Shown here: positions 32,280 through 44,329 of the stretch, piece by piece
Layout of the letters: each line of letters begins with the position of its first letter
Numbering within the stretch: position 1 is the first letter of the stretch
Source: Piromyces finnis finn
Taxonomy: Eukaryota; Fungi; Neocallimastigomycota
DNA: 64,000 nt
Assembly (NCBI GenBank): GCA_002104945.1
Contig: MCFH01000009.1
Coordinates: 992,001 to 1,056,000, forward strand
Direction: 5' to 3'
Notes under the pieces: generated by a model
Databases searched by the model: none
What the model saw: the letters and a program-made list of their open reading frames with translations, nothing else
What the model was told of the DNA's origin: nothing
Made by a program: the position numbers and the translations under genes

Positions 32280-34718
32280 ATGACTTTATATGAATCATAT
32301 CCAATTCATCGTTGCGTCTATCGTGACGATGAAATGACCCTTAAGGAACTTTTAAAAAATGAAGAAATTAAAAAACAGATAAATGAGAAAGATAATCATG
32401 GAAACACACCAATTCATTTAGCACTTATGTTAGGTAGACGAAATTGTATTATTACTTTAATTAATAATGGATGTGATATTATAACGCGTAATAATTATGG
32501 TTGGAATCCTTTGGAAGAATCAATTTTGTAAGAAATTAAAATAATATTAATAAATAAAAAAAAAAGTTGATATATAATTTTAAAAAGAATAATGAGTATT
32601 GAGTGGTGTTAAAATGAGAATAAGAATAGTAATTAATATCAGTATTATATTTTAAATAAATTTTTAAATTGTCTTTTATTTTATGTTTTACAGTTTAGGA
32701 GATGTTGATATCATTGAAAAAATTTCTGTTTTAAAAATAAAAACTTATATTAAAACCTTCGGTAAAGTAATTTTAAAGAAGTGGAATGACATTTTACCAA
32801 ATTTTTATTTCAAAAATAAAATTAAATTCAAATGTCCAAGTAAGTAAAAATATTTTAATAAATGTATTAATATATCATTAATATTAAATATTTGGATTAT
32901 TATTATTATTATTATATTAATATAAAAATGTAATTAATAACTTTTAATTATAATAGTTTCTGTTCTTGCAAAACTATTGGTATCAGATACAATGGAGTTA
33001 TATAAAAGGGACAACTGTTTTAGAATTAACACAACTATTGGAGGATTATCACATAAAGGAATTCCAAGAATACTAAAAGGTAACATTTCATTCATTATTC
33101 GTTTTTATGAAGATACAGGTATGAATAAAATATTGTAAAAATATATTATTTATAGATATTCTTGAAATGAAATTATGTATTGATATACTTAAATTATATT
33201 TTGCATATATTAATTTAGGCGACTGCAAGTGTTTTATATTAGATAATAAAAAGAAAACATATCAGGAAATATATCCAAATTTTCCACAATGGTGTATGAA
33301 TAATATAATTAAAAGTAATATTAACATAAAAACGCTATATAAAGTTTTTATACTTTTTACCGATTGTATTGTCAAACAAAAAAAGGGAGGTTTATTAAAA
33401 AAAGCATCGAGATCCATTTCAATGGAAAATGGAAAAATTTACAAAACTGATATAGTTAAAATTAAGGATGTGAAGACAGTTATCCGAAAGAGAGATAATG
33501 AAACTGTTATAGGAGATTATAAGAGTGATATAAAATCTAAAGTTTTAAATTTAACTATAAATTCTGAAAAATTTAGTAACATTTCATTAAATAAAAATAA
33601 TACAAATAGTAATGAATCTTTAATTAGTAATGATACTGCAAGCGATAATGATGAAGATAGTGATGATAATGAGGATAGTGATAATGATTCAGAATACACT
33701 ATTAATGATAAAATAGATATTTATAAAGAATATAATGATAGTACTCAACATGAAAGTATTTTTAAAAAGTATATAAAAAATGATACAATCGATCTTGAAA
33801 CTGAAAAAATTATCACTGAAATTTTAATAAACGGCGAAGATAGTGAGCATAATAAAGTAGATACTAATGATATAGCATTTTTAAGTTCTAATTATCCTGA
33901 CTATATTGAAAATCTTATTAATAAGCCAATATCCAGAAAGAAGTATATTCAAATGTTACAACATTTAAATATTGAAGATAAAACTGATTCTTCTAATAAT
34001 GAATATCATTCTACTTTAACTAGAAGAAATAAAATTAAAGTATCTGAAGATCCAAATGTTGCATTTTATAGAATTATTAGTGGTATTCCATCAGAAGAAG
34101 AGGAAAAACAAACAGAAGAGGTAAAAAATAGAATAAAAAATTTCGATTGGAATAAAAATAAAATTACTGAAGAAGACTATTTCAATCCATCCAATACTGA
34201 AAATCTTCATATGGGTAGATTAATGAATATATCAGAAAATACTAGAAGTAATAGATATATTAAACTTTGGATGACTCAAAATAATGAATTTCCAATTTCA
34301 TTAGAAAGCTTAGAACCTGTGTTTGAATTTATTAATATGATTTTTTTTGATACCATAAATAGTGGAATTAATGGAGAAAATGTTTTATTTGGTAAAAAAA
34401 ATGAATATTTAAAGTGCCTATTTAATGAGAAAAGATTCCCAGTTAGACTTGGTAAGTTTTTATTTCTTTTTTTTTTTTATGGAAAAATCATTTTATATAA
34501 ATATATAAATATTTTTATTAGGTGTATGAATTATTATCATTAATTATTTATGTATATATTTTCTTTTATCAAAATAATGATTATAGAATTACCAATATAT
34601 CCAACAGTTAAAATGGTAATTAAAAATGTAGATTGTAGTATTGACAAAGAGAAAATACCTCAAAGTTTATTTGAAATACCATCTGATTACGTAGAAGATG
34701 ACATTTTTTTCAGAATAA

Positions 34719-36830: not shown

Positions 36831-37857
36831 ATGAAATTTATTTCAGGAATTTTCTTCGCTACTGCTTTATTAAGTCAATATAAATTAGCTTCATCCGCTT
36901 CATTCCCAAATTGTAACGGATGTGTTCTTTACGCTTCTGGTACTGATGGTGCCTTATGGGGTTGGGAAAACAGTAACTTCTGTAAACTTTCTTCAAGTTG
37001 CAATATTTCAGGAGTTACTAACAATAATTCTTCTTCCTCTTCCTCTTCCTCTTCCTCTTCCTCTTCTTCAAATACTTCTAACTCTTCTTCAACTTCCGCT
37101 TCCAACTCTTCTTCCAACTCTTCCTCCAATTCCTCTAGTTCTAATTCTTCAGATTCTGATTCTAAGAATACTACAACTATTGTTAAGACAACAACTGTAG
37201 CTTCATCTCAAACCAGCAGTTCTTCTTCTTCTAGCAACAGTTCTTCTAGCAACAGTTCTTCTAATAATGATTCTAACAATGATTCTTCCAACAGTAATTC
37301 TTCTAGCAGTAACAATGGTAACTCCTCTTCCACTACTTCTTCCAATACCTCAAACTCCACTAGTACTAGCACTAGTGCTTCTTCTACTAACTCCAATAAC
37401 AACAATAATCAAGTTGGTTCAACAAACACTAGTAATAATGGTGTAACCACCCAATCTTCTAATAATAATGGTAATGTTGTAGCTTGTAATTCATGTGACG
37501 TTGTTGCTACTGGTGGTGATGGTGCCTTATATGGTTGGGAAAATGGAGCTGTAAGTATCTAATATGAATAATTATTTATAATTAATATACTTATTAAAAA
37601 ATTTGAATTAAAATGTTTTAATAATTGAAATTAAAAATTTTGATATTATGAAATTTAAAATAAAGACTTGTAAAATTGATGGTGTTAAATGTAACCTTGG
37701 AGGAAATACCGCCACTAATGCTGGTAACAATACTACTACTCTTACTAACACCAATACTTCAAACAATGTACAAGATTCAGGTGCTTCTGATTTCATTGCC
37801 AATTTCTATGTTATCGCTGCTGCTTTAGTTGCTCTTTTAGTTTCATACGGTTATTAA
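36831..37857 (+). CDS. 303-aa secreted protein: signal peptide, CBM10/dockerin-like module, ~160-aa Ser/Asn/Thr linker, second CBM10/dockerin-like module, GPI-anchor-like C-terminus; no catalytic domain; exons 36831-37550 and 37666-37857
   Basis: Module 1 CNGCVLYASGTDGALWGWENSNFCKLSSSC. Module 2 CNSCDVVATGGDGALYGWENGA|TCKIDGVKC, joined across a phase-0 GTAAGT...AAAG intron. C-terminus QDSGASDFIANFYVIAAALVALLVSYGY*. Confidence 0.85.
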
Positions 37858-38268: not shown

Positions 38269-38372
38269 GATGGTGTTACATATCTTAATGTTCCATTTGA
38301 TAAGAGTTTGCCCCTTAAACCTGTTATTAAAGCTCTTAATAACAAGGTTTTGAAAGGACTTTTCTCAGTCAG
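38269..38372 (+). mobile_element. Left fragment of an older, 5'-truncated copy of the same LINE family (RT C-terminal region), interrupted by the intact element
   Basis: Aligns by eye to ~42190-42294 of the intact element (...CCATTTGATAAGA.TTTG.CCCTTAAACC...TCTTAATAACAAGGTTTTGAAAGGACTTTTCTCAGTCAG). Confidence 0.9.
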
Positions 38373-41300
38373 TTCTACTCATGCTCATGGTACTGAGAGA
38401 GTAGAAAGAATTAAATCCAAGTATTGCGCAATGGATGCTTGGTTAGTCTTAAGGTAAAATTATTAGGACTAAGCTCATGGTACTGAGCGATTAAAAAACA
38501 TTTTATTCATCGAATTTAAGTATTTGATGAATAAGTTGAATGTTTGATATTCAGGTAAGTTTGTATAGTATTTAATTAGAAGAGTAATACATTTTGTTGC
38601 TGTATTTTTTCTTTTATTCATGTATTCATGTAGTACTACTCTTCTCTTGTAAGAATCCAATGTAGTCAACTTTAGCATTTGCATTGTATTTTTATATTCA
38701 TGTAGCTATTGTTGTATTGTTTCTTGTAAGAGACTGATTCACTCTACATCATGTAAAAATACTATTCACAAGCTTTCTGGTGTCGACATTCTTGATTCAA
38801 ATTTTTACCAATTTAAATATTTAATGAAAAGTAAAGTCAAACAAGTTTAGTGTCAAAAAGCGAATCGAATTTACTAACAACAAACCAAAACTAGAATTTT
38901 TAAAAAAAAATTAACAACTAGAATTCAAAAAATAAGAAACTTTAAACAAAGCATCGTAACAATTTTTGTACTATCCAGTACTTTTAAGAAGAGAGAGAGA
39001 GACAGATTTTTTTCCATATACGTTATATTTATAATTTTTATTAGTATTTATTTTATATTCAATATTTTTTTAATTAGAATTTATTATCATGTCAGTCCTT
39101 TATATTAAAGATAAGAATTATATCAGACGTGGTACCCGGTCTTATGGTATCCCCTTAGATGATATTCGCTCCTTCTTTATCCGTGGTATTCGATCATGGT
39201 CAGTAAATATGCTATGGGAAAAACTCGAGGTTATTCTAGAAGATAAATTTAATTCAGTTATTAGTGTTAAATATTTTCAGACTTTCAATGATCACTTTTT
39301 CTTAGTCAAGGTTCATGGTTCATCGAAAGATTGTATTAAAATCTTACACATGTTAAAGAAGAAACTTTCAGTTACCTCAATTTCCTTTTCAGCTCGTAGT
39401 AGAAGGAATCACAAATACACTTTTTCCACTCTCAAACGTAAAATTTTAGTTTCTAATAAACATCAACATTCTATTCAACAATCATTTCAACAATCAGTTC
39501 AACAATCTCATCAACAATCCGATCTTCAACTAGATCTTCAACAAGATCTTCAACAAGTTTCCCATCATGAAAATATTCCAGATCTACAGCAAATACAATT
39601 TCAATCTCAACATTCAACAATTAATTCTAATAGTTCTATCAACTCTGATAACAGTTCAATAGTTGATAGTTTTTCAGTTTCACAGCCATCTAATAATAGT
39701 TCTACTTATTCCTCTGATGCATCATCCATTAATAACGATGACTTTAATAATAATAATAATAGCAACGATTCTTCCTCATCCAACAAGCCTGATAACTTTT
39801 CTTTTTGTCTTAGTTGGAACACCAATGGGTGGAATCACGAAAAGAGAGATAGTATTAGCTATTTCACAGCTATTTTCAAACCATTATTTTTATGTTTCCA
39901 AGAAACTGGTAATGGTTCTGGTTCGAATACAGATTATCCTTGTCGTGTTACTTTGCGAAACTATAGACACTTTTTCAAGAAAGCTGACGAATCAGTTCCT
40001 GGAATGAGAGGTTTATATTTAGGTTTTCACAATTCGTGTCAAGCCTCACTTGAAAACTTCTCTGGAAAGTATATTATTTCTATTTATACTTTTAGTCTCT
40101 GGAATAGATTCAAATGCTCGATTGGAAATGTTTATATGCCTCATAGTCATCACAACATCTATGTTGATCATGCAAAGTTAGAAGTTCGCTTGTGGTTACA
40201 AACTCATTCATCCCATCCATCGATTCTTGTTGGTGATTTTAATATGTCTAAAGTAAAATTATCCAACTGGTTATCAACTAATGGATTAGGAGATTGGGAA
40301 ATTCTTCCGCTTAGAGGGTCTACTATCTCTTGGACTCGAGGTGATCAATCTTCCGACATTGACCATGCTCTTATCAATTCGAAGATGAAAGATCTTATTC
40401 ACTCAGGATCATTTATAAATAATTTTTATCCTGTATCAGACCATAAGCCACTTCTTATTAATGGTAAAATTATTCCTATGGAAGATTTTTCTAATGACTT
40501 TAATGTTCCTAAGAAAATTCTGAAATGGAATAGATTAAAATGTATTGAGGAAAAGGAATCTATTATCAGTCATAATAAATTCCAAATACTTTCAGCAAAA
40601 TTCAACGATCCTAATGTTTCAACAGATGAACTTTCCAAAGAGTTTACTTCAACTGCTTTTTCAATTGCAGACGAGCTCAGTATCACCTCAGCAAATAATG
40701 TTATAAAGTCTTCATTTCATATTTCACAACAAATTTTTAATCTTCAAAAAATCAAAATGAAGTTGTATAAGAGATTTAAAAAAGAAAGAATTTATGATAT
40801 AGATGAATTTATTAAACGAATTAAAATCTACCGTAAGCTCATTGATTACATCCACAAAAGATGTAATGAATTTAGGAAGCAAGAATATCTTCATTGGATT
40901 AAAACAGGATGTGAGTATATGAAGAGTCATAATCCTAAGAAGGCCTGGAAATGGATCAAGAAAACTGCAAAAATTGGAAAAGATTCTTTCTTTATTGCTC
41001 AACCAATTAAAAATAAAAATGGAGAATTAGTTGTTGCTACGGAAGAACAACTAGATGTGTGGCATGATCATTTCGAAAACCTTGCATCAGATCCAAGTGG
41101 TGTAAGTCTTGATTTGGAGCATTGGTATGAAGAACCAACGAATAAACGTTTTTCACTCCCTATGCTTGATGAATGGGATATCAACCAAGATATTAGTATT
41201 GATGAAGTCAAGTCAGCTATCCTCTCTACTCCAAATTATAAAGCATCAGGTCCGGATGGTATTCCAATTGAATTTTACAAAGCATTAATTCCATCAAGTA

Positions 41301-43876
41301 ATGATTCTAATAATGCTACAGATAATAATTCTTCTGGTAATACCACTTCAGATAATGATGCTCATGGTTTAAATTTTATTCTTAAATTATTCAACCGTAT
41401 TTGGGATGGAGACTTCCCCAACTCATGGAATGAATCCAGTATTGTTTCTATTCCTAAGAAGGGAGATTTGACAGATTGTGATAACTATCGAGGTATATCA
41501 CTTATCAATAATGGTATTAAGTTGATTTCCAAAATTGTCACCACTAGAATCTCAGAATATGGTTTAAAGAATAATTTCATTAGACCTGTACAATTTGGTT
41601 TTCGAAAAAAGGAAGAAAGTATCAGTCTTTTCATTTCAATCCAAGAAATATGCCGTAGACGTCAATTAGATAATAAAGAGACATATTTGGCCTTTTTAGA
41701 TCTCAGGAAAGCATACGATTCAGTCCCAATCGGTAATATTCTCCATAAATTAGATTGTTTAGGAATCCGAGGTAAAAGTTTACAATTTATCAAAAATTTA
41801 TATTTAACATCTAAGGCTAATGTCAAATTAGATGGACAATTCTCGAAATCTTTTGATGTGAAGAAAGGAGTTCGTCAAGGTTGCCCTCTTTCTCCTATTC
41901 TCTTTAATCTCTTTATTAATGATATATTTAAAGAGTGCGAAGATCTAGGAGTCAGTTTAGGTGACACTCGATGCTGTGGTGGACTTTTTGCAGATGATAT
42001 AGTTATTTGTGCTCCAACAAGAGGATGCTTAAAAAAGATGCTTAGAAGAGTTAATGAATGGGCATTGTATAATGAAATGGAATTTGGTATCCAGAAGTGT
42101 TCATCGATGGTGATTCGTCCTGAATCAATAGAAAATCAGAACAAGAGAGATCCAACATTTTACTTAGCAGGACAACCCATTCCAACTACTGATTGTTATA
42201 CTTATCTTGGTGCTCCATTTGATAAGAATTTGTCCCTTAAACCAGTAATTAAAGTTCTTAATAACAAGGTTTTGAAAGGACTTTTCTCAGTCAGCAAATT
42301 CTTAAGAAATCCTAATATTCCTATTCCTTTCAAAAAGCTAGTACTTAACTCACAAGTGATTAGCAGAGTTTCATACTTTGCACCATTACTTAGATCCAAC
42401 AAAGCTAGGTCTAGGATTGCTCAGAAGCATGTTAACAAAGGATTACGATGGGTTGCCGGAGTTCATAAAGCTGTATCGTTTATATCTTTATACTCTATCT
42501 CAAAAGATTTGAATATTCCTCCATTGTCAGCCAAATGTGCGTTAGCTCAGGTTAGATGTTTTAACAAATGGAAAAACTCAAATTGTATTATCTCACACCT
42601 TGTCAATTACATTCCTAAATTTAGAAAATACACGTGGTGCAAATCAAGTAGGACACTTGATAAAAAACTAAAGAAGCATGGAGATATTAAAGCAATTAAA
42701 AACTTTTATTGGAAAGATCTCAAAGGGAATTCAATCAAAGCGCAATATTATGATGATAATAAATTTATTGAAACTAAAGATTTTATTAAATTATGTTATG
42801 AATACCCAGAGTTTGCCTATGGCTTCTACTGGCTATTGAAAGCAAGAAGCGGATACAAGTTGGATGCTAGAGTTGCCAAAGCTGCTAAATTTATTGATCC
42901 AGTTTGTCCTAACTACTGTCCATGTTGCAAGTGTGGAGATCAAAGTATTAAACATTGGTTATTAGATTGTCCAACATTTAGAGATATCCGTATTAAACAT
43001 TATGATTCTATAGTCCATCTATTAAATTTTTTCAGTCAACGTAATTCCAATAGTCCTATCAATAATAATGAAATTGATAATGTCAGCAGAGATAGCAATA
43101 ACAGTAATAGTAATAGTAACAATAGTAATAATAACAATAGTAATAATAACAATAGTAGTAATAGTAATAATAGAAATAGTAATAATAACAATAGTAGTAA
43201 TAGAAATAATAATATTAGTAATGATAGCAATAGTGATGATAATAATTCTAATTTAGATAGTAATTTAGTTAATGATAGTAATAGTTCTAATAATCCGGTG
43301 AATATTGATGCGTATGATTATTCTAGTGTGTGCAGTAAAATATTTAAATTCCTTCTTGGGGGAAGAAGTTTTAACAATATTAATTACAATTCAAGGGAAT
43401 GGAAAGAACTTTGTAAGCGTCAGATTCAATCTGGTACTAATGAAGGAACACCATTCTTGACGGTAACAGCGGAACTTCTAACCAAAATCATGCCTTTTGC
43501 TATTGGCCAGCAATGGTCAATGTTCAAAAGGTTTGAAGCAACATCCAAGAGCGTCAATGCTGAAGAAACAGTAAGACAGGCCAGGAGGGCCAGCGCAACC
43601 AATGGAGATCATAATTTTGTCCCATGATAAAATTTTGATCTTTGGCTCGGTGTCCCATTGGAAGTCAAATACAATTATTATACTTTAGTATGATAGTGGC
43701 TTTCTTACTTTAATTAAAATTACTAGAATACATTATACCCAATTTTTATTCATTTGTGTTTATTTAAACATATTTTTTTTTTTTTATATTTAATTTTTTT
43801 ATTACATGTATTATAATTGTAATTAAATTAATAATAAAGTTTAAAATATTTGATGCCGTTAAAAAAAAAAAAAAAA
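38373..43876 (+). mobile_element. Full-length, apparently intact single-ORF non-LTR retrotransposon (LINE), 5504 bp: 716-nt 5' UTR, ORF, ~230-nt 3' UTR, 16-nt poly(A), flanked by an 11-bp TSD; clade not assigned
   Basis: TTCTCAGTCAG at 38362-38372 and 43877-43887; poly(A) at 43861-43876; uninterrupted 1512-aa APE-RT ORF. Confidence 0.93.
39089..43627 (+). CDS. LINE polyprotein: N-terminal RRM-like region, Q/S/N-rich linker, APE endonuclease, reverse transcriptase, CCHC zinc knuckle
   Basis: APE: SWNTNG, CFQETG, VGDFN, SDIDHAL, SDHKP. RT: KASGPDGIP, IPKKGDLTDCDNYRGISL, QFGFR, FLDLRKAYDSV, GVRQGCPLSPILFNLFIND, LFADD. C-x2-C-x8-H-x4-C at ~42917-42970. Confidence 0.96.
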   Translation: MSVLYIKDKNYIRRGTRSYGIPLDDIRSFFIRGIRSWSVNMLWEKLEVILEDKFNSVISVKYFQTFNDHFFLVKVHGSSKDCIKILHMLKKKLSVTSISFSARSRRNHKYTFSTLKRKILVSNKHQHSIQQSFQQSVQQSHQQSDLQLDLQQDLQQVSHHENIPDLQQIQFQSQHSTINSNSSINSDNSSIVDSFSVSQPSNNSSTYSSDASSINNDDFNNNNNSNDSSSSNKPDNFSFCLSWNTNGWNHEKRDSISYFTAIFKPLFLCFQETGNGSGSNTDYPCRVTLRNYRHFFKKADESVPGMRGLYLGFHNSCQASLENFSGKYIISIYTFSLWNRFKCSIGNVYMPHSHHNIYVDHAKLEVRLWLQTHSSHPSILVGDFNMSKVKLSNWLSTNGLGDWEILPLRGSTISWTRGDQSSDIDHALINSKMKDLIHSGSFINNFYPVSDHKPLLINGKIIPMEDFSNDFNVPKKILKWNRLKCIEEKESIISHNKFQILSAKFNDPNVSTDELSKEFTSTAFSIADELSITSANNVIKSSFHISQQIFNLQKIKMKLYKRFKKERIYDIDEFIKRIKIYRKLIDYIHKRCNEFRKQEYLHWIKTGCEYMKSHNPKKAWKWIKKTAKIGKDSFFIAQPIKNKNGELVVATEEQLDVWHDHFENLASDPSGVSLDLEHWYEEPTNKRFSLPMLDEWDINQDISIDEVKSAILSTPNYKASGPDGIPIEFYKALIPSSNDSNNATDNNSSGNTTSDNDAHGLNFILKLFNRIWDGDFPNSWNESSIVSIPKKGDLTDCDNYRGISLINNGIKLISKIVTTRISEYGLKNNFIRPVQFGFRKKEESISLFISIQEICRRRQLDNKETYLAFLDLRKAYDSVPIGNILHKLDCLGIRGKSLQFIKNLYLTSKANVKLDGQFSKSFDVKKGVRQGCPLSPILFNLFINDIFKECEDLGVSLGDTRCCGGLFADDIVICAPTRGCLKKMLRRVNEWALYNEMEFGIQKCSSMVIRPESIENQNKRDPTFYLAGQPIPTTDCYTYLGAPFDKNLSLKPVIKVLNNKVLKGLFSVSKFLRNPNIPIPFKKLVLNSQVISRVSYFAPLLRSNKARSRIAQKHVNKGLRWVAGVHKAVSFISLYSISKDLNIPPLSAKCALAQVRCFNKWKNSNCIISHLVNYIPKFRKYTWCKSSRTLDKKLKKHGDIKAIKNFYWKDLKGNSIKAQYYDDNKFIETKDFIKLCYEYPEFAYGFYWLLKARSGYKLDARVAKAAKFIDPVCPNYCPCCKCGDQSIKHWLLDCPTFRDIRIKHYDSIVHLLNFFSQRNSNSPINNNEIDNVSRDSNNSNSNSNNSNNNNSNNNNSSNSNNRNSNNNNSSNRNNNISNDSNSDDNNSNLDSNLVNDSNSSNNPVNIDAYDYSSVCSKIFKFLLGGRSFNNINYNSREWKELCKRQIQSGTNEGTPFLTVTAELLTKIMPFAIGQQWSMFKRFEATSKSVNAEETVRQARRASATNGDHNFVP

Positions 43877-44329
43877 TTCTCAGTCAGTAAATTCTTAATT
43901 CTTGACAGTAACAACGGAACTTCTAACCAAAATCATGCCTTTTGTTATTGGCCAGCAATGGTCAATGTTCAAAAGGTTTGAAGCAACATCCAAGAGCGTC
44001 AATGCTGAAGAAACAGTAAGACAAGCCAGGAGGGCCAGCGCAACCAATGAAGATTGTAATTTTGTTCCATGATAAAATTTTGATCTTTAACTTCGTGTTC
44101 CATTGGAAGTCAAATACAATTATTATACTTTATTATAATAGTGGCTTTCTTACTTAAATTAAAATTACTAGAATACATTATACCCAATTCTTATTCATTT
44201 GTGTTTATTTAATCATTTTTTTTTTTTTTAATTTTTATTTTTCTATTTTTTATTTTTAAATTTATTTTTTATGATGTATTATAATTTTAATTAAATTAAT
44301 AATAAAGTAGGTGCAGTTAAAAAAAAAAA
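43877..44329 (+). mobile_element. Right fragment of the older LINE copy, with a ~1.15-kb internal deletion, its 3' end and an 11-nt poly(A)
   Basis: 43877-43898 matches 42284-42305, then jumps to match 43453 onward (18 substitutions counted by eye over ~315 nt). It ends GGTGCAGTT(A)11 versus GATGCCGTT(A)16 in the intact copy. Confidence 0.92.

What the first reader, a model, noticed from the sequence alone, without database searches (positions are those of the whole stretch)
36831..37857. Non-catalytic, GPI-type double CBM10/dockerin protein: candidate cell-surface tether for cellulose or the fungal cellulosome
Once the intron (37551-37665) is removed, two separate ORF calls become one 303-aa protein. 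It has a signal peptide, two C-x2-C-x19-C-x5/6-C modules with a DGAL(W/Y)GWEN core, and a ~160-aa Ser/Asn/Thr spacer. The tail has a classic omega-like S278-G-A followed by a 21-aa hydrophobic end with no cytosolic tail. There is no catalytic domain. Established: anaerobic-fungal cellulosome enzymes use CBM10-family non-catalytic dockerins to bind scaffoldins. Canonical dockerins read WGVEN..WC, while the WGWE core is closer to bacterial cellulose-binding CBM10. Inference: this protein either anchors scaffoldin/cellulosomes to the rhizoid or zoospore surface, or is an adhesin that attaches the cell to plant fibre.
Basis: partly seen in the sequence, partly recalled or inferred. Interest (0 to 1): 0.75.

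Follow-up and report, generated by a model that had tools for sequence, protein, structure and literature searches.

The report
Surface-anchored CBM10-module protein of Piromyces
This gut-fungus gene encodes a small enzyme-free protein with two dockerin-related binding modules on a sugar-coated stalk and a lipid-anchor-type tail, so it is a testable candidate for how these fungi hold on to plant fibre or to their cellulose-degrading complexes.

Summary
In Piromyces finnis, exon 1 (36831-37550), a 115-nt GTAAGT..AG intron and exon 2 (37666-37857) give a 303-codon gene. It has a signal peptide, two 4-Cys modules, a 161-residue Ser/Asn/Thr stalk and an S278-G-A site followed by an uncharged C-terminal tail. 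Orthologues support the splice: intron-less transcript-type contigs of a two-module orthologue and of the four-module Neocallimastix orthologue read straight across the same junction.

The modules belong to Pfam CBM_10 (PF02013), but they are not canonical fungal dockerins. They form a small subclass of 31 sites in about 13 genes, against at least 561 CBM_10 candidates genome-wide. The subclass lacks the N-terminal Cys/GY-CC segment and the dockerin ligand residues Asp23 and Trp35. It carries the W-G-W pair that binds cellulose in bacterial CBM10. The same modules sit beside true dockerins on GH5 enzymes, alone on GH45, next to CBM1, and before GPI-like tails on GH26/GH5.

Best reading (inferred, untested): a glycosylated, GPI-anchored surface adhesin for plant cell-wall glycans. 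A cellulosome tether is the main rival. The scan found a five-module paralogue earlier on other DNA (s1-176731). The spliced protein was never submitted to any tool; all searches ran exon by exon.

The parts
36831..37550 (+). Exon 1 (codons 1-240)
   Evidence: ATG with A at -3. GC 36.5% against 8% in the 5' flank. The ORF runs into a stop 3 codons inside the intron.
36831..36896 (+). Signal peptide, residues 1-22 (inferred cleavage after S-S-A)
   Evidence: MK + a 12-residue hydrophobic core + small residues at -3/-1. Paralogues and orthologues have the same layout, with module 1 starting right after it. No SignalP run was possible.
36900..37007 (+). Module 1 (residues 24-59): 4-Cys CBM_10-type module, W43-G-W45
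   Evidence: Pfam PF02013 23.3 bits against cut-off 23. Subclass profile 62.9 bits. AlphaFold model pLDDT 79.7; best matches are 2j4m/1e8p.
37008..37466 (+). Ser/Asn/Thr-rich stalk (residues 60-212)
   Evidence: S 50%, N 23%, T 14% over residues 63-212; 19 N-x-S/T sequons in exon 1. Orthologues have stalks of different length and composition at the same place.
37473..37550 (+). Module 2, exon-1 part (residues 215-240), Y234-G-W236
   Evidence: Subclass profile 40 bits, profile positions 3-25. 59-71% identical to module 2 of the orthologues.
37551..37665 (+). Intron, 115 nt, phase 0, GTAAGT..AG
   Evidence: GC 9.6%, several in-frame stops. Position is homologous to the 291-nt intron of the Neocallimastix orthologue, which is spliced out in 5 contigs, and to introns in L002 and L004.
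37666..37692 (+). Module 2, exon-2 part (residues 241-249) with Cys3 and Cys4
   Evidence: Restores C-x19-C-x6-C. The same junction is read through in L076 and L083.
37693..37776 (+). Short Asn/Thr-rich spacer (residues 250-277)
   Evidence: Three N-x-S/T sequons.
37777..37785 (+). Candidate omega site S278-G279-A280
   Evidence: Small residues at omega, +1 and +2. An S-G-(A/S) triplet at the same place is conserved in L083 and P0151.
37792..37854 (+). Uncharged/hydrophobic C-terminal signal (residues 283-303), no cytosolic tail
   Evidence: Kyte-Doolittle 11-residue window means above 1.9 for windows centred on residues 288-297 (peak 3.25); no charge after D282. 43-46% identical to the orthologue tails, which end the same way.
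37855..37857 (+). Stop codon TAA

Best explanation
The gene encodes a secreted, heavily glycosylated protein with no catalytic domain. It is attached to the outer face of the plasma membrane or the wall of Piromyces finnis by a GPI anchor added at about S278. It displays two small disulfide-bonded modules: one at the tip of a ~160-residue Ser/Asn/Thr stalk and one near the anchor.

The modules belong to a distinct 4-Cys subclass of the CBM_10/fungal-dockerin superfamily. This subclass most likely binds plant cell-wall beta-glycan (cellulose, possibly mannan) through the exposed W-G-W (Y-G-W) aromatic pair, as bacterial CBM10 does. The protein would then act as an adhesin holding rhizoid or zoospore surfaces to fibre.

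Shown here: the gene structure, the module family and subclass, conservation of the architecture and of the splice, and the presence of GPI transamidase genes.

Inferred: signal-peptide cleavage, GPI attachment, glycosylation, and above all the ligand.
For: 1) Gene model and tail features.

2) The architecture is conserved.
- In this genome: L003 = ORX42538.1 (4 modules + hydrophobic tail) and L002 (5 modules + tail).
- In Neocallimastix, Anaeromyces, Pecoramyces and metagenome/transcript contigs.
- The S-G-(A/S) triplet and the tail are conserved among orthologues.

3) Gpi16 and Gaa1 genes are present in the genome.

4) The modules are a separate subclass.
- 31 sites score 40-75 bits against their own profile, then there is a gap; canonical dockerins score at most 31 bits.
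- The canonical dockerins form a clade that excludes them (support 99/93; 88.6 with the window's module included).

5) Dockerin ligand-site residues Tyr8/Asp23/Trp35 (PMC12954947). In 120 subclass modules Asp23 is replaced by Gly in 73% (D in 4%). Trp35 becomes Ser 54%, Ala 11%, Phe 10% and is never Trp. Tyr8 is variable.

6) The position after W-G is Trp in 75% of subclass modules, against Val/Ile in dockerins. It aligns with Trp22/Trp24 of the Cellvibrio xylanase CBM10, the residues pivotal for cellulose binding (Ponyi 2000, as cited in PMC8121702).

7) Domain contexts expected of a CBM.
- GH5 + 1, 2 or 6 such modules + two canonical dockerins.
- GH45 with only these modules.
- GH5 + 2 modules + CBM1.
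- GH26 and GH5 with these modules + a GPI-like tail.
- All the catalytic partners belong to glycoside-hydrolase families (GH5, GH45, GH26) whose annotated activities here are cellulase or mannanase.

8) Related 2-Cys modules occur in a fungus without cellulosomes (Paraphysoderma) and in many bacteria.
Against: - No binding data exist for any module of this subclass. The literature treats them as dockerins.
- The closest solved structure by sequence and by model is a true dockerin: 2j4m, second module (profile E 7e-4; TM 0.65). The model's alignment included dockerins, which biases it.
- Module 1 of this protein keeps aromatic residues (F26, F50) at the Tyr8 and Trp35 positions, so a dockerin-like site is not excluded for it.
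- A third aromatic residue completing a planar cellulose-binding face was not identified.
- In GH5 + 2 modules + CBM1 a second cellulose binder looks redundant.
- The GPI call rests on rules applied by hand, not on a trained predictor.
- No transcript of the P. finnis gene itself was seen.
Confidence: 0.5

Rival explanations
1. Cellulosome tether. The modules are functional (divergent) dockerins that bind scaffoldin repeats or another cellulosomal protein, so the GPI-anchored protein holds cellulosomes at the rhizoid or zoospore surface.
For: - The modules are members of PF02013, and the best structural and sequence match is the P. equi Cel45A double dockerin.
- Module 1 keeps aromatic residues at two of the three dockerin ligand positions.
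- Dockerin epitopes are seen on P. finnis rhizoids and zoospores, and how cellulosomes attach to cells is unresolved (PMC8262932).
- The field counts these modules as dockerins.
Against: - Asp23 is lost in both modules, and Trp35 and Tyr8 are lost in module 2.
- The N-terminal strand and disulfide of dockerins are absent.
- The two modules are 161 residues apart, not a tandem pair with a ~10-residue linker as in double dockerins.
- The same modules occur together with two canonical dockerins in one enzyme, up to six copies, which is hard to explain if they did the same job.
- Some scaffoldins have their own membrane anchors.
Confidence: 0.25
2. Same ectodomain, but the C-terminal hydrophobic stretch is kept as a tail-less single-pass membrane anchor and is not exchanged for GPI.
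For: - A hydrophobic segment of about 17 residues lies at the very C terminus.
- Several paralogues elsewhere end in a basic residue plus two residues after the hydrophobic run, which could be a minimal cytosolic tail.
- No GPI predictor could be run.
Against: - There is no charged residue after the segment in this protein or in its orthologues.
- A conserved small-residue S-G-(A/S) triplet lies 5-9 residues upstream of the hydrophobic core.
- The segment is short for a transmembrane helix.
- The genome has the GPI transamidase subunits Gpi16 and Gaa1.
Confidence: 0.12
3. The modules recognise something other than plant glycan or scaffoldin, for example the fungus's own wall (chitin/glucan). 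Alternatively the protein is simply a structural wall mannoprotein.
For: - The stalk makes up more than half of the protein and resembles wall mannoproteins.
- The ligand is unknown for the whole subclass.
- Bacterial relatives sit on unrelated partners such as GGDEF and astacin domains.
Against: In fungi the subclass was found only on enzymes of the plant-polysaccharide hydrolase families GH5, GH45 and GH26, or in these stalked proteins.
Confidence: 0.1

Closest known systems
Fungal dockerin (non-catalytic docking domain) of Neocallimastigomycota, e.g. Piromyces equi Cel45A double dockerin, PDB 2J4M/2J4N and 1E8P/1E8Q
   Same: - Same Pfam family, PF02013.
- Same core D-G-x-W-G-x-E-N-x3-C.
- The four cysteines align with four of the six cysteines of the 6-Cys dockerin type.
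- The predicted fold superposes (TM 0.65, rmsd 1.3 A over 34 columns; VIA Z 4.5).
   Different: - No N-terminal Cys...G-Y-x-C segment and so no first disulfide.
- Asp23 is replaced by Gly. Trp35 is replaced by Phe (module 1) or Thr (module 2).
- An extra Leu precedes the core Trp, and Val30 is replaced by Trp.
- The modules are not in a close tandem pair.
- They lie outside the dockerin clade.
- Binding to scaffoldin is untested.
Bacterial CBM10 (CAZy family 10), Cellvibrio japonicus Xyn10A module, PDB 1QLD/1E8R
   Same: - W-G-W-E-(D/N)-x3-C-x5-C is shared, including the two Trp pivotal for cellulose binding.
- Same Pfam family.
- Profile-profile E 9.5e-10.
   Different: - The N-terminal half differs: bacterial C-x10-C-x6 against C-x2-C-x12 here.
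- The sequence match covers only about 20 residues (E 0.17-0.28).
- No structural hit to 1QLD was returned.
Bacterial tandem 2-Cys CBM_10-like repeats (D-G-D-G-(W/Y)-G-W-E-N, metagenomic proteins such as P0009, P0014)
   Same: This is the best profile-profile match of the subclass (E 4e-14; mean 21-27 bits both ways). The Cys 12 residues before the core Trp and the Cys 8 residues after it are at identical spacing.
   Different: Only one disulfide. The hosts are bacterial and the partner domains are unrelated (GGDEF, astacin). Function is unknown.
GPI-anchored fungal wall adhesins (Als/Flo/Epa type architecture)
   Same: Signal peptide, N-terminal ligand-binding domain, long Ser/Thr-rich glycosylated stalk and a C-terminal GPI signal. 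This is established knowledge of these families; the architecture here is.
   Different: No sequence relationship. The binding domains here are 35-residue CBM_10-type modules. One of them sits next to the anchor rather than at the tip.
Paralogues and orthologues annotated 'hypothetical / CBM10 domain-containing protein' (ORX42538.1 P. finnis; ORY16862.1 N. californiae; ORX79140.1 A. robustus)
   Same: Same family and architecture. ORY16862.1-type P0151 is the orthologue, with the same intron position and the same tail.
   Different: They have 3-5 modules. The window gene and L083 have two, lacking the last two modules.

Membership tests
Pfam PF02013 CBM_10 (cellulose or protein binding domain) | HMM score at or above the gathering cut-off (23 bits) | tested here: met
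   The N-terminal 64 residues score 23.3 bits (E 9e-5); whole exon 1 scores 18.3 bits. The margin is thin, but the orthologue P0151 scores 56.9 bits. Module 2 could not be scored intact because it spans the intron.
Pfam PF02013 CBM_10 (cellulose or protein binding domain) | Small disulfide-bonded beta fold of 1E8P/2J4M | tested here: met
   Model of module 1: pLDDT 79.7. The top two hits are 2j4m (TMq 0.65) and 1e8p (TMq 0.59); VIA Z 4.5 and 3.1. The alignment used for the model contained dockerins.
Canonical fungal dockerin | N-terminal Cys and G-Y-x-C-C motif (first conserved disulfide) | tested here: not met
   Absent from both modules and from all 120 subclass modules.
Canonical fungal dockerin | Ligand-site residues Tyr8, Asp23, Trp35 (Raghothama 2001, as cited in PMC12954947) | tested here: not met
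   Module 1 has Phe/Gly/Phe and module 2 has Val/Gly/Thr at the aligned positions. Across the subclass Asp23 is Gly in 73% and Trp35 is never Trp.
Canonical fungal dockerin | Groups with dockerins in a tree or profile score | tested here: not met
   Module 1 scores 12.4 bits against the dockerin core profile and 50 bits against its own subclass. The dockerin clade excludes it (support 99/93).
Canonical fungal dockerin | Binds scaffoldin/cellulosome | not testable with these tools
   Needs protein-binding assays.
Bacterial CBM10 (CAZy) | Aromatic pair Trp22/Trp24 (W-G-W) | tested here: met
   W43/W45 and Y234/W236 align with the W-G-W of 1e8r.
Bacterial CBM10 (CAZy) | Cysteine framework C-x10-C-x13-C-x5-C and Tyr8 | tested here: not met
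   Only the C-terminal C-x5-C half matches; the N-terminal half is not alignable.
Bacterial CBM10 (CAZy) | Binds crystalline cellulose | not testable with these tools
   Needs Avicel/PASC depletion assays.
GPI-anchored protein | N-terminal signal peptide | tested here: met
   Rule-based only: hydrophobic core at residues 3-14 and S-S-A before the cleavage point. Conserved in relatives.
GPI-anchored protein | Small omega/omega+2 residues, polar spacer, hydrophobic C terminus with no cytosolic tail | tested here: met
   S278-G-A, a spacer of about 6 residues, a hydrophobic run to the last residue, and no charge after D282. Conserved in orthologues. No trained predictor was available.
GPI-anchored protein | Host has the GPI transamidase | tested here: met
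   Multi-exon Gpi16 (PF04113) and Gaa1 (PF04114) genes, with matches above cut-off.
GPI-anchored protein | Lipid anchor demonstrated | not testable with these tools
   Needs PI-PLC release or mass spectrometry.

The most novel reading that the evidence does not exclude
The '4-Cys W-G-W' modules are a functionally separate, carbohydrate-binding sister (or forerunner) of the fungal dockerin that has so far been counted as 'dockerin' in anaerobic-fungal genomes. The stalked, GPI-anchored proteins built only from them (2-5 modules, conserved across at least four genera) are the long-sought substrate adhesins of rhizoids and zoospores. If so, part of the 'dockerin-domain protein' census, including the 'N-terminal dockerins' of GH45, is not cellulosomal.
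Probability: 0.4. Interest if true: 0.75.

Novelty: new variant of a known kind. Interest (0 to 1): 0.6.

Why it matters
How anaerobic gut fungi and their cellulosomes attach to cells and to biomass is named as a key unresolved point (PMC8262932). This gene family gives concrete, small and easily expressed candidates.

The analysis also splits the Pfam CBM_10 hits of these fungi into two classes with different signature residues. That would change which enzymes are counted as cellulosomal, and which modules should be used as 'dockerins' in synthetic cellulosomes. One published 'double dockerin' study probably used this subclass: the architecture and length of its enzyme match L056, although the identity was not proven.

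If the modules bind cellulose, they are a new compact fungal cellulose-binding tag.

Tried and rejected
- The first AlphaFold job, on 15 subclass modules only, gave pLDDT 50 and was not used.
- Word-indexed protein searches restricted to residues 1-64 of exon 1 and of L083 returned nothing. This is uninformative for such a short region.
- Exact look-ups of the exon-1 read-through ORF, of L083 and of L056 were not in the collection, so the public annotation status of this gene is unknown.
- Steenbakkers 2001 (docking-domain subfamilies) is not held under two PMC ids. I recall from memory that it sorted docking domains by cysteine pattern, and could not check whether this subclass was described there.
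- PDB profile hits to Photorhabdus PLL/PHL lectins (E 2e-4 summed) are 11-residue matches repeated in propeller blades. I reject them as homology.
- 'Purely bacterial-type CBM10' is rejected because only the C-terminal half aligns.
- 'Ordinary dockerin' is rejected on the membership tests.
- The joined 303-residue protein was not built or submitted anywhere.

Full report
**Organism and locus.** The window is contig C222 of a 56.46-Mb, 232-contig genome with about 18% GC. ORFs from paralogous loci are identical to Piromyces finnis proteins ORX42538.1, ORX52602.1 and ORX50076.1, so the organism is P. finnis.

**Observation.**
- The ATG at 36831 opens a 240-codon exon with GC 36.5%.
- At 37551 the sequence turns into GTAAGT. 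GC drops to 9.6% and a stop follows after three codons.
- At 37665 an AG precedes a 63-codon exon with GC 34.9% that ends in TAA at 37855-37857. The flanks are 8-13% GC.
- Splicing is in phase 0. It joins the first half of a second cysteine module (C219, C222) to its second half (C242, C249). The spacing C-x2-C-x19-C-x6-C then parallels C28-x2-C31-x19-C51-x5-C57 of module 1.
- Between the modules lie 161 residues; in residues 63-212 Ser, Asn and Thr make up 87%. The whole protein has 22 N-x-S/T sequons.
- The tail reads S278-G-A. The last charge is at D282, followed by 21 uncharged residues to the end.
- Pfam finds only CBM_10.

**Independent support for the splice.**
- The representative search found a 159-residue protein that is the exon-1 read-through of an orthologue. 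Its 90%-identity cluster also holds the full 310-residue Neocallimastix californiae/lanati protein, P0151.
- In three Neocallimastix genome assemblies this gene spans 1224 nt. Five JGI contigs of 1.2-1.4 kb carry the identical 933-nt CDS without interruption.
- The difference is one 291-nt GTAAGT..AG phase-0 intron, at exactly the position of the window's intron: three residues after the core Glu and one before Cys3 of module 2.
- A closer orthologue is L083/L084 (75% identical over residues 1-64). It is a single 405-codon ORF on a 1.4-kb contig with the same two-module layout, a much longer stalk, and a tail 46% identical to the window's that ends in the same last three residues.
- Introns at the same module position also occur twice in paralogue L002 and once in the GH26 gene L004.
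- I did not see a P. finnis transcript of this gene.
All searches were run exon by exon by reference.

**What the modules are.**
- Module 1 just reaches the Pfam CBM_10 cut-off (23.3 against 23 bits). Canonical dockerins of the same genome score 55-69 bits, with at least 561 candidate sites.
- A profile of 15 modules of the window's type (A1) splits the genome cleanly. Thirty-one sites score 40-75 bits, including the window's two at 62.9 and 40.0 bits. Everything else scores 36.5 bits or less, and canonical dockerins score at most 31 bits.
- Against 1.84 billion representatives only 298 proteins reach E 1e-3.
- Full-length matches are anaerobic-fungal: Piromyces, Neocallimastix, Anaeromyces, Pecoramyces and gut metagenomes. 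Most partial matches are bacterial tandem 2-Cys repeats or classical bacterial CBM10, all PF02013.

**Where the subclass sits between dockerins and bacterial CBM10.**

Mean bit scores on the shared 32-residue core:

| Modules scored | Profile | Mean bits |
|---|---|---|
| Subclass | bacterial 2-Cys | 21.4 |
| Subclass | classical bacterial CBM10 | 14.7 |
| Subclass | canonical dockerin | 8.9 |

Profile-profile E-values:

| Pair | E-value |
|---|---|
| Subclass vs bacterial 2-Cys | 4e-14 |
| Subclass vs dockerin | 7.5e-12 |
| Dockerin vs bacterial 2-Cys | 5e-7 |
| Dockerin vs classical CBM10 | 1.6e-4 |

- The subclass is therefore intermediate.
- In maximum-likelihood trees the canonical dockerins form a clade that excludes the subclass. 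Support is 99/93, and 88.6 with the window's module 1 included.
- Monophyly of the subclass itself is weakly supported but not rejected (p-AU 0.73).

**Residue-level comparison** (A2).
- The four cysteines align with the second Cys of the dockerin C-C pair, the optional Cys three residues later, the Cys of W-C-G, and the optional last Cys.
- What is missing is the N-terminal Cys...G-Y-x-C segment.
- The three dockerin ligand-site residues are Tyr8, Asp23 and Trp35 (PMC12954947). Asp23 is Gly in 73% of 120 subclass modules. Trp35 is Ser, Ala or Phe and never Trp. Tyr8 is variable.
- The window's module 1 has Phe/Gly/Phe at these positions and module 2 has Val/Gly/Thr.
- Conversely, Val30 of dockerins is Trp in 75% of the subclass. 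This creates the W-G-W that aligns with Trp22/Trp24 of the Cellvibrio CBM10. Those residues are pivotal for cellulose binding (Ponyi 2000, cited in PMC8121702).
- An AlphaFold model of module 1 was built with a 56-row alignment and reached pLDDT 79.7. It matches only 2j4m and 1e8p above noise. The fold is therefore the dockerin/CBM10 fold, though the alignment contained dockerins.

**Contexts of the subclass in P. finnis.**
- GH5 + one module + two canonical dockerins (L007).
- GH5-(2 modules)-GH5-(2 modules)-two dockerins (ORX50076.1).
- GH5 + six modules + two dockerins (L058).
- Four clustered GH45 genes with one or two N-terminal modules; the one read in full (L005 = ORX52602.1) has no dockerin (L010-L012 were not read through).
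- GH5 + two modules + CBM1 (L056). This is probably the PfGH5 of PMC12120621, where the modules are called a double dockerin.
- GH26 + one module + a GPI-like tail (L004).
- Three enzyme-free stalked proteins with tails: the window gene, L003 and L002.
- Pecoramyces has GH5 + three modules + a tail (P0004).
- A module that sits next to two real dockerins, repeats up to six times, and accompanies only enzymes of the GH5, GH45 and GH26 families behaves like a CBM rather than a dockerin. This is inference.
- Published work lumps all of these as dockerins and reports no binding test for this subclass. Canonical dockerin enzymes did not bind Avicel.

**Anchor.**
- The tail fits the GPI rules: small omega and omega+2 residues, a short polar spacer, and a hydrophobic end with no cytosolic residues.
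- The S-G-(A/S) triplet and the tail are conserved in L083 and P0151.
- Relatives with 3-5 modules end similarly, some with a basic residue three from the end.
- Gpi16 and Gaa1 are encoded in the genome.
- No trained predictor was available, so GPI attachment is inferred. A tail-less membrane anchor is the alternative.

**Conclusion.**
- The finding is real and the architecture is conserved across at least four genera.
- The most likely function is a glycosylated, GPI-anchored surface protein whose modules bind plant cell-wall glycan, that is, an adhesin (about 0.5).
- A dockerin-like tether for cellulosomes is the main rival (about 0.25).
- The family is unannotated beyond 'hypothetical/CBM10 domain-containing'.
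- No paper combining anaerobic-fungal dockerin or CBM10 modules with a GPI anchor was found.
- The scan itself noted the five-module paralogue and the GH26 case earlier.

Noticed in passing
L058 (G000:C135:723001-726105), minus strand ORF 418-2457: A GH5 cellulase carries six tandem 4-Cys W-G-W modules followed by two canonical dockerins. This is the clearest case of the two module classes in one polypeptide.
   Followed up: partly
L056 (G000:C178:1312981-1316082), minus strand ORF 1228-2793: Signal peptide + GH5 + two 4-Cys modules + C-terminal CBM1, with no canonical dockerin. Its architecture and length match the 'PfGH5' of PMC12120621, whose 'double dockerin' would then be this subclass. 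Identity was not proven because the exact sequence is not in the collection.
   Followed up: partly
L004 (G000:C203:127421-130552), minus strand, about 1270-2013: A GH26-like gene has a last exon, behind an intron at the conserved module position, that completes a 4-Cys module and adds a GPI-like hydrophobic tail.
   Followed up: yes
L005, L010, L011, L012 (G000:C57:557-579 kb): A cluster of four GH45 genes has one or two N-terminal 4-Cys modules each. L005, the only one read in full, has no canonical dockerin. The literature counts these as 'N-terminal dockerins' (PMC7015840).
   Followed up: partly
P0011 / P0173 (Paraphysoderma sedebokerense KAI9136425.1, KAI9136424.1): A blastocladiomycete without cellulosomes has related 2-Cys W-G-W-E modules, next to an RlpA-like double-psi beta-barrel protein. 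This suggests that CBM_10-type modules in zoosporic fungi predate dockerins.
   Followed up: no
A1 profile against PDB: The stretch V-x-A-T-G-x-D-x-x-L-W of the modules matches the blade motif of Photorhabdus PLL/PHL propeller lectins, repeated 5-8 times per chain (summed E 2e-4). It is probably a convergent beta-hairpin motif, not homology.
   Followed up: no
L006 / L069 (G000:C189:428542-431697): A 4-Cys module (52.9 bits) and a canonical dockerin lie in frames broken by several stop codons. This looks like a decayed gene copy.
   Followed up: no
window 33167-34543 (+): A 458-codon ORF upstream of the gene is low in complexity and rich in Asn/Lys/Asp/Glu. It was not examined. The gene of interest is flanked on the other side by the LINE noted at 38269-44329.
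   Followed up: no
P0013 (545 aa, NCBI/JGI contig of 5.6 kb): This protein has two modules almost identical in core to the fungal subclass but with only two cysteines (Cys1 and Cys3 positions). Its source organism is unknown, and it may link the fungal and bacterial forms.
   Followed up: no
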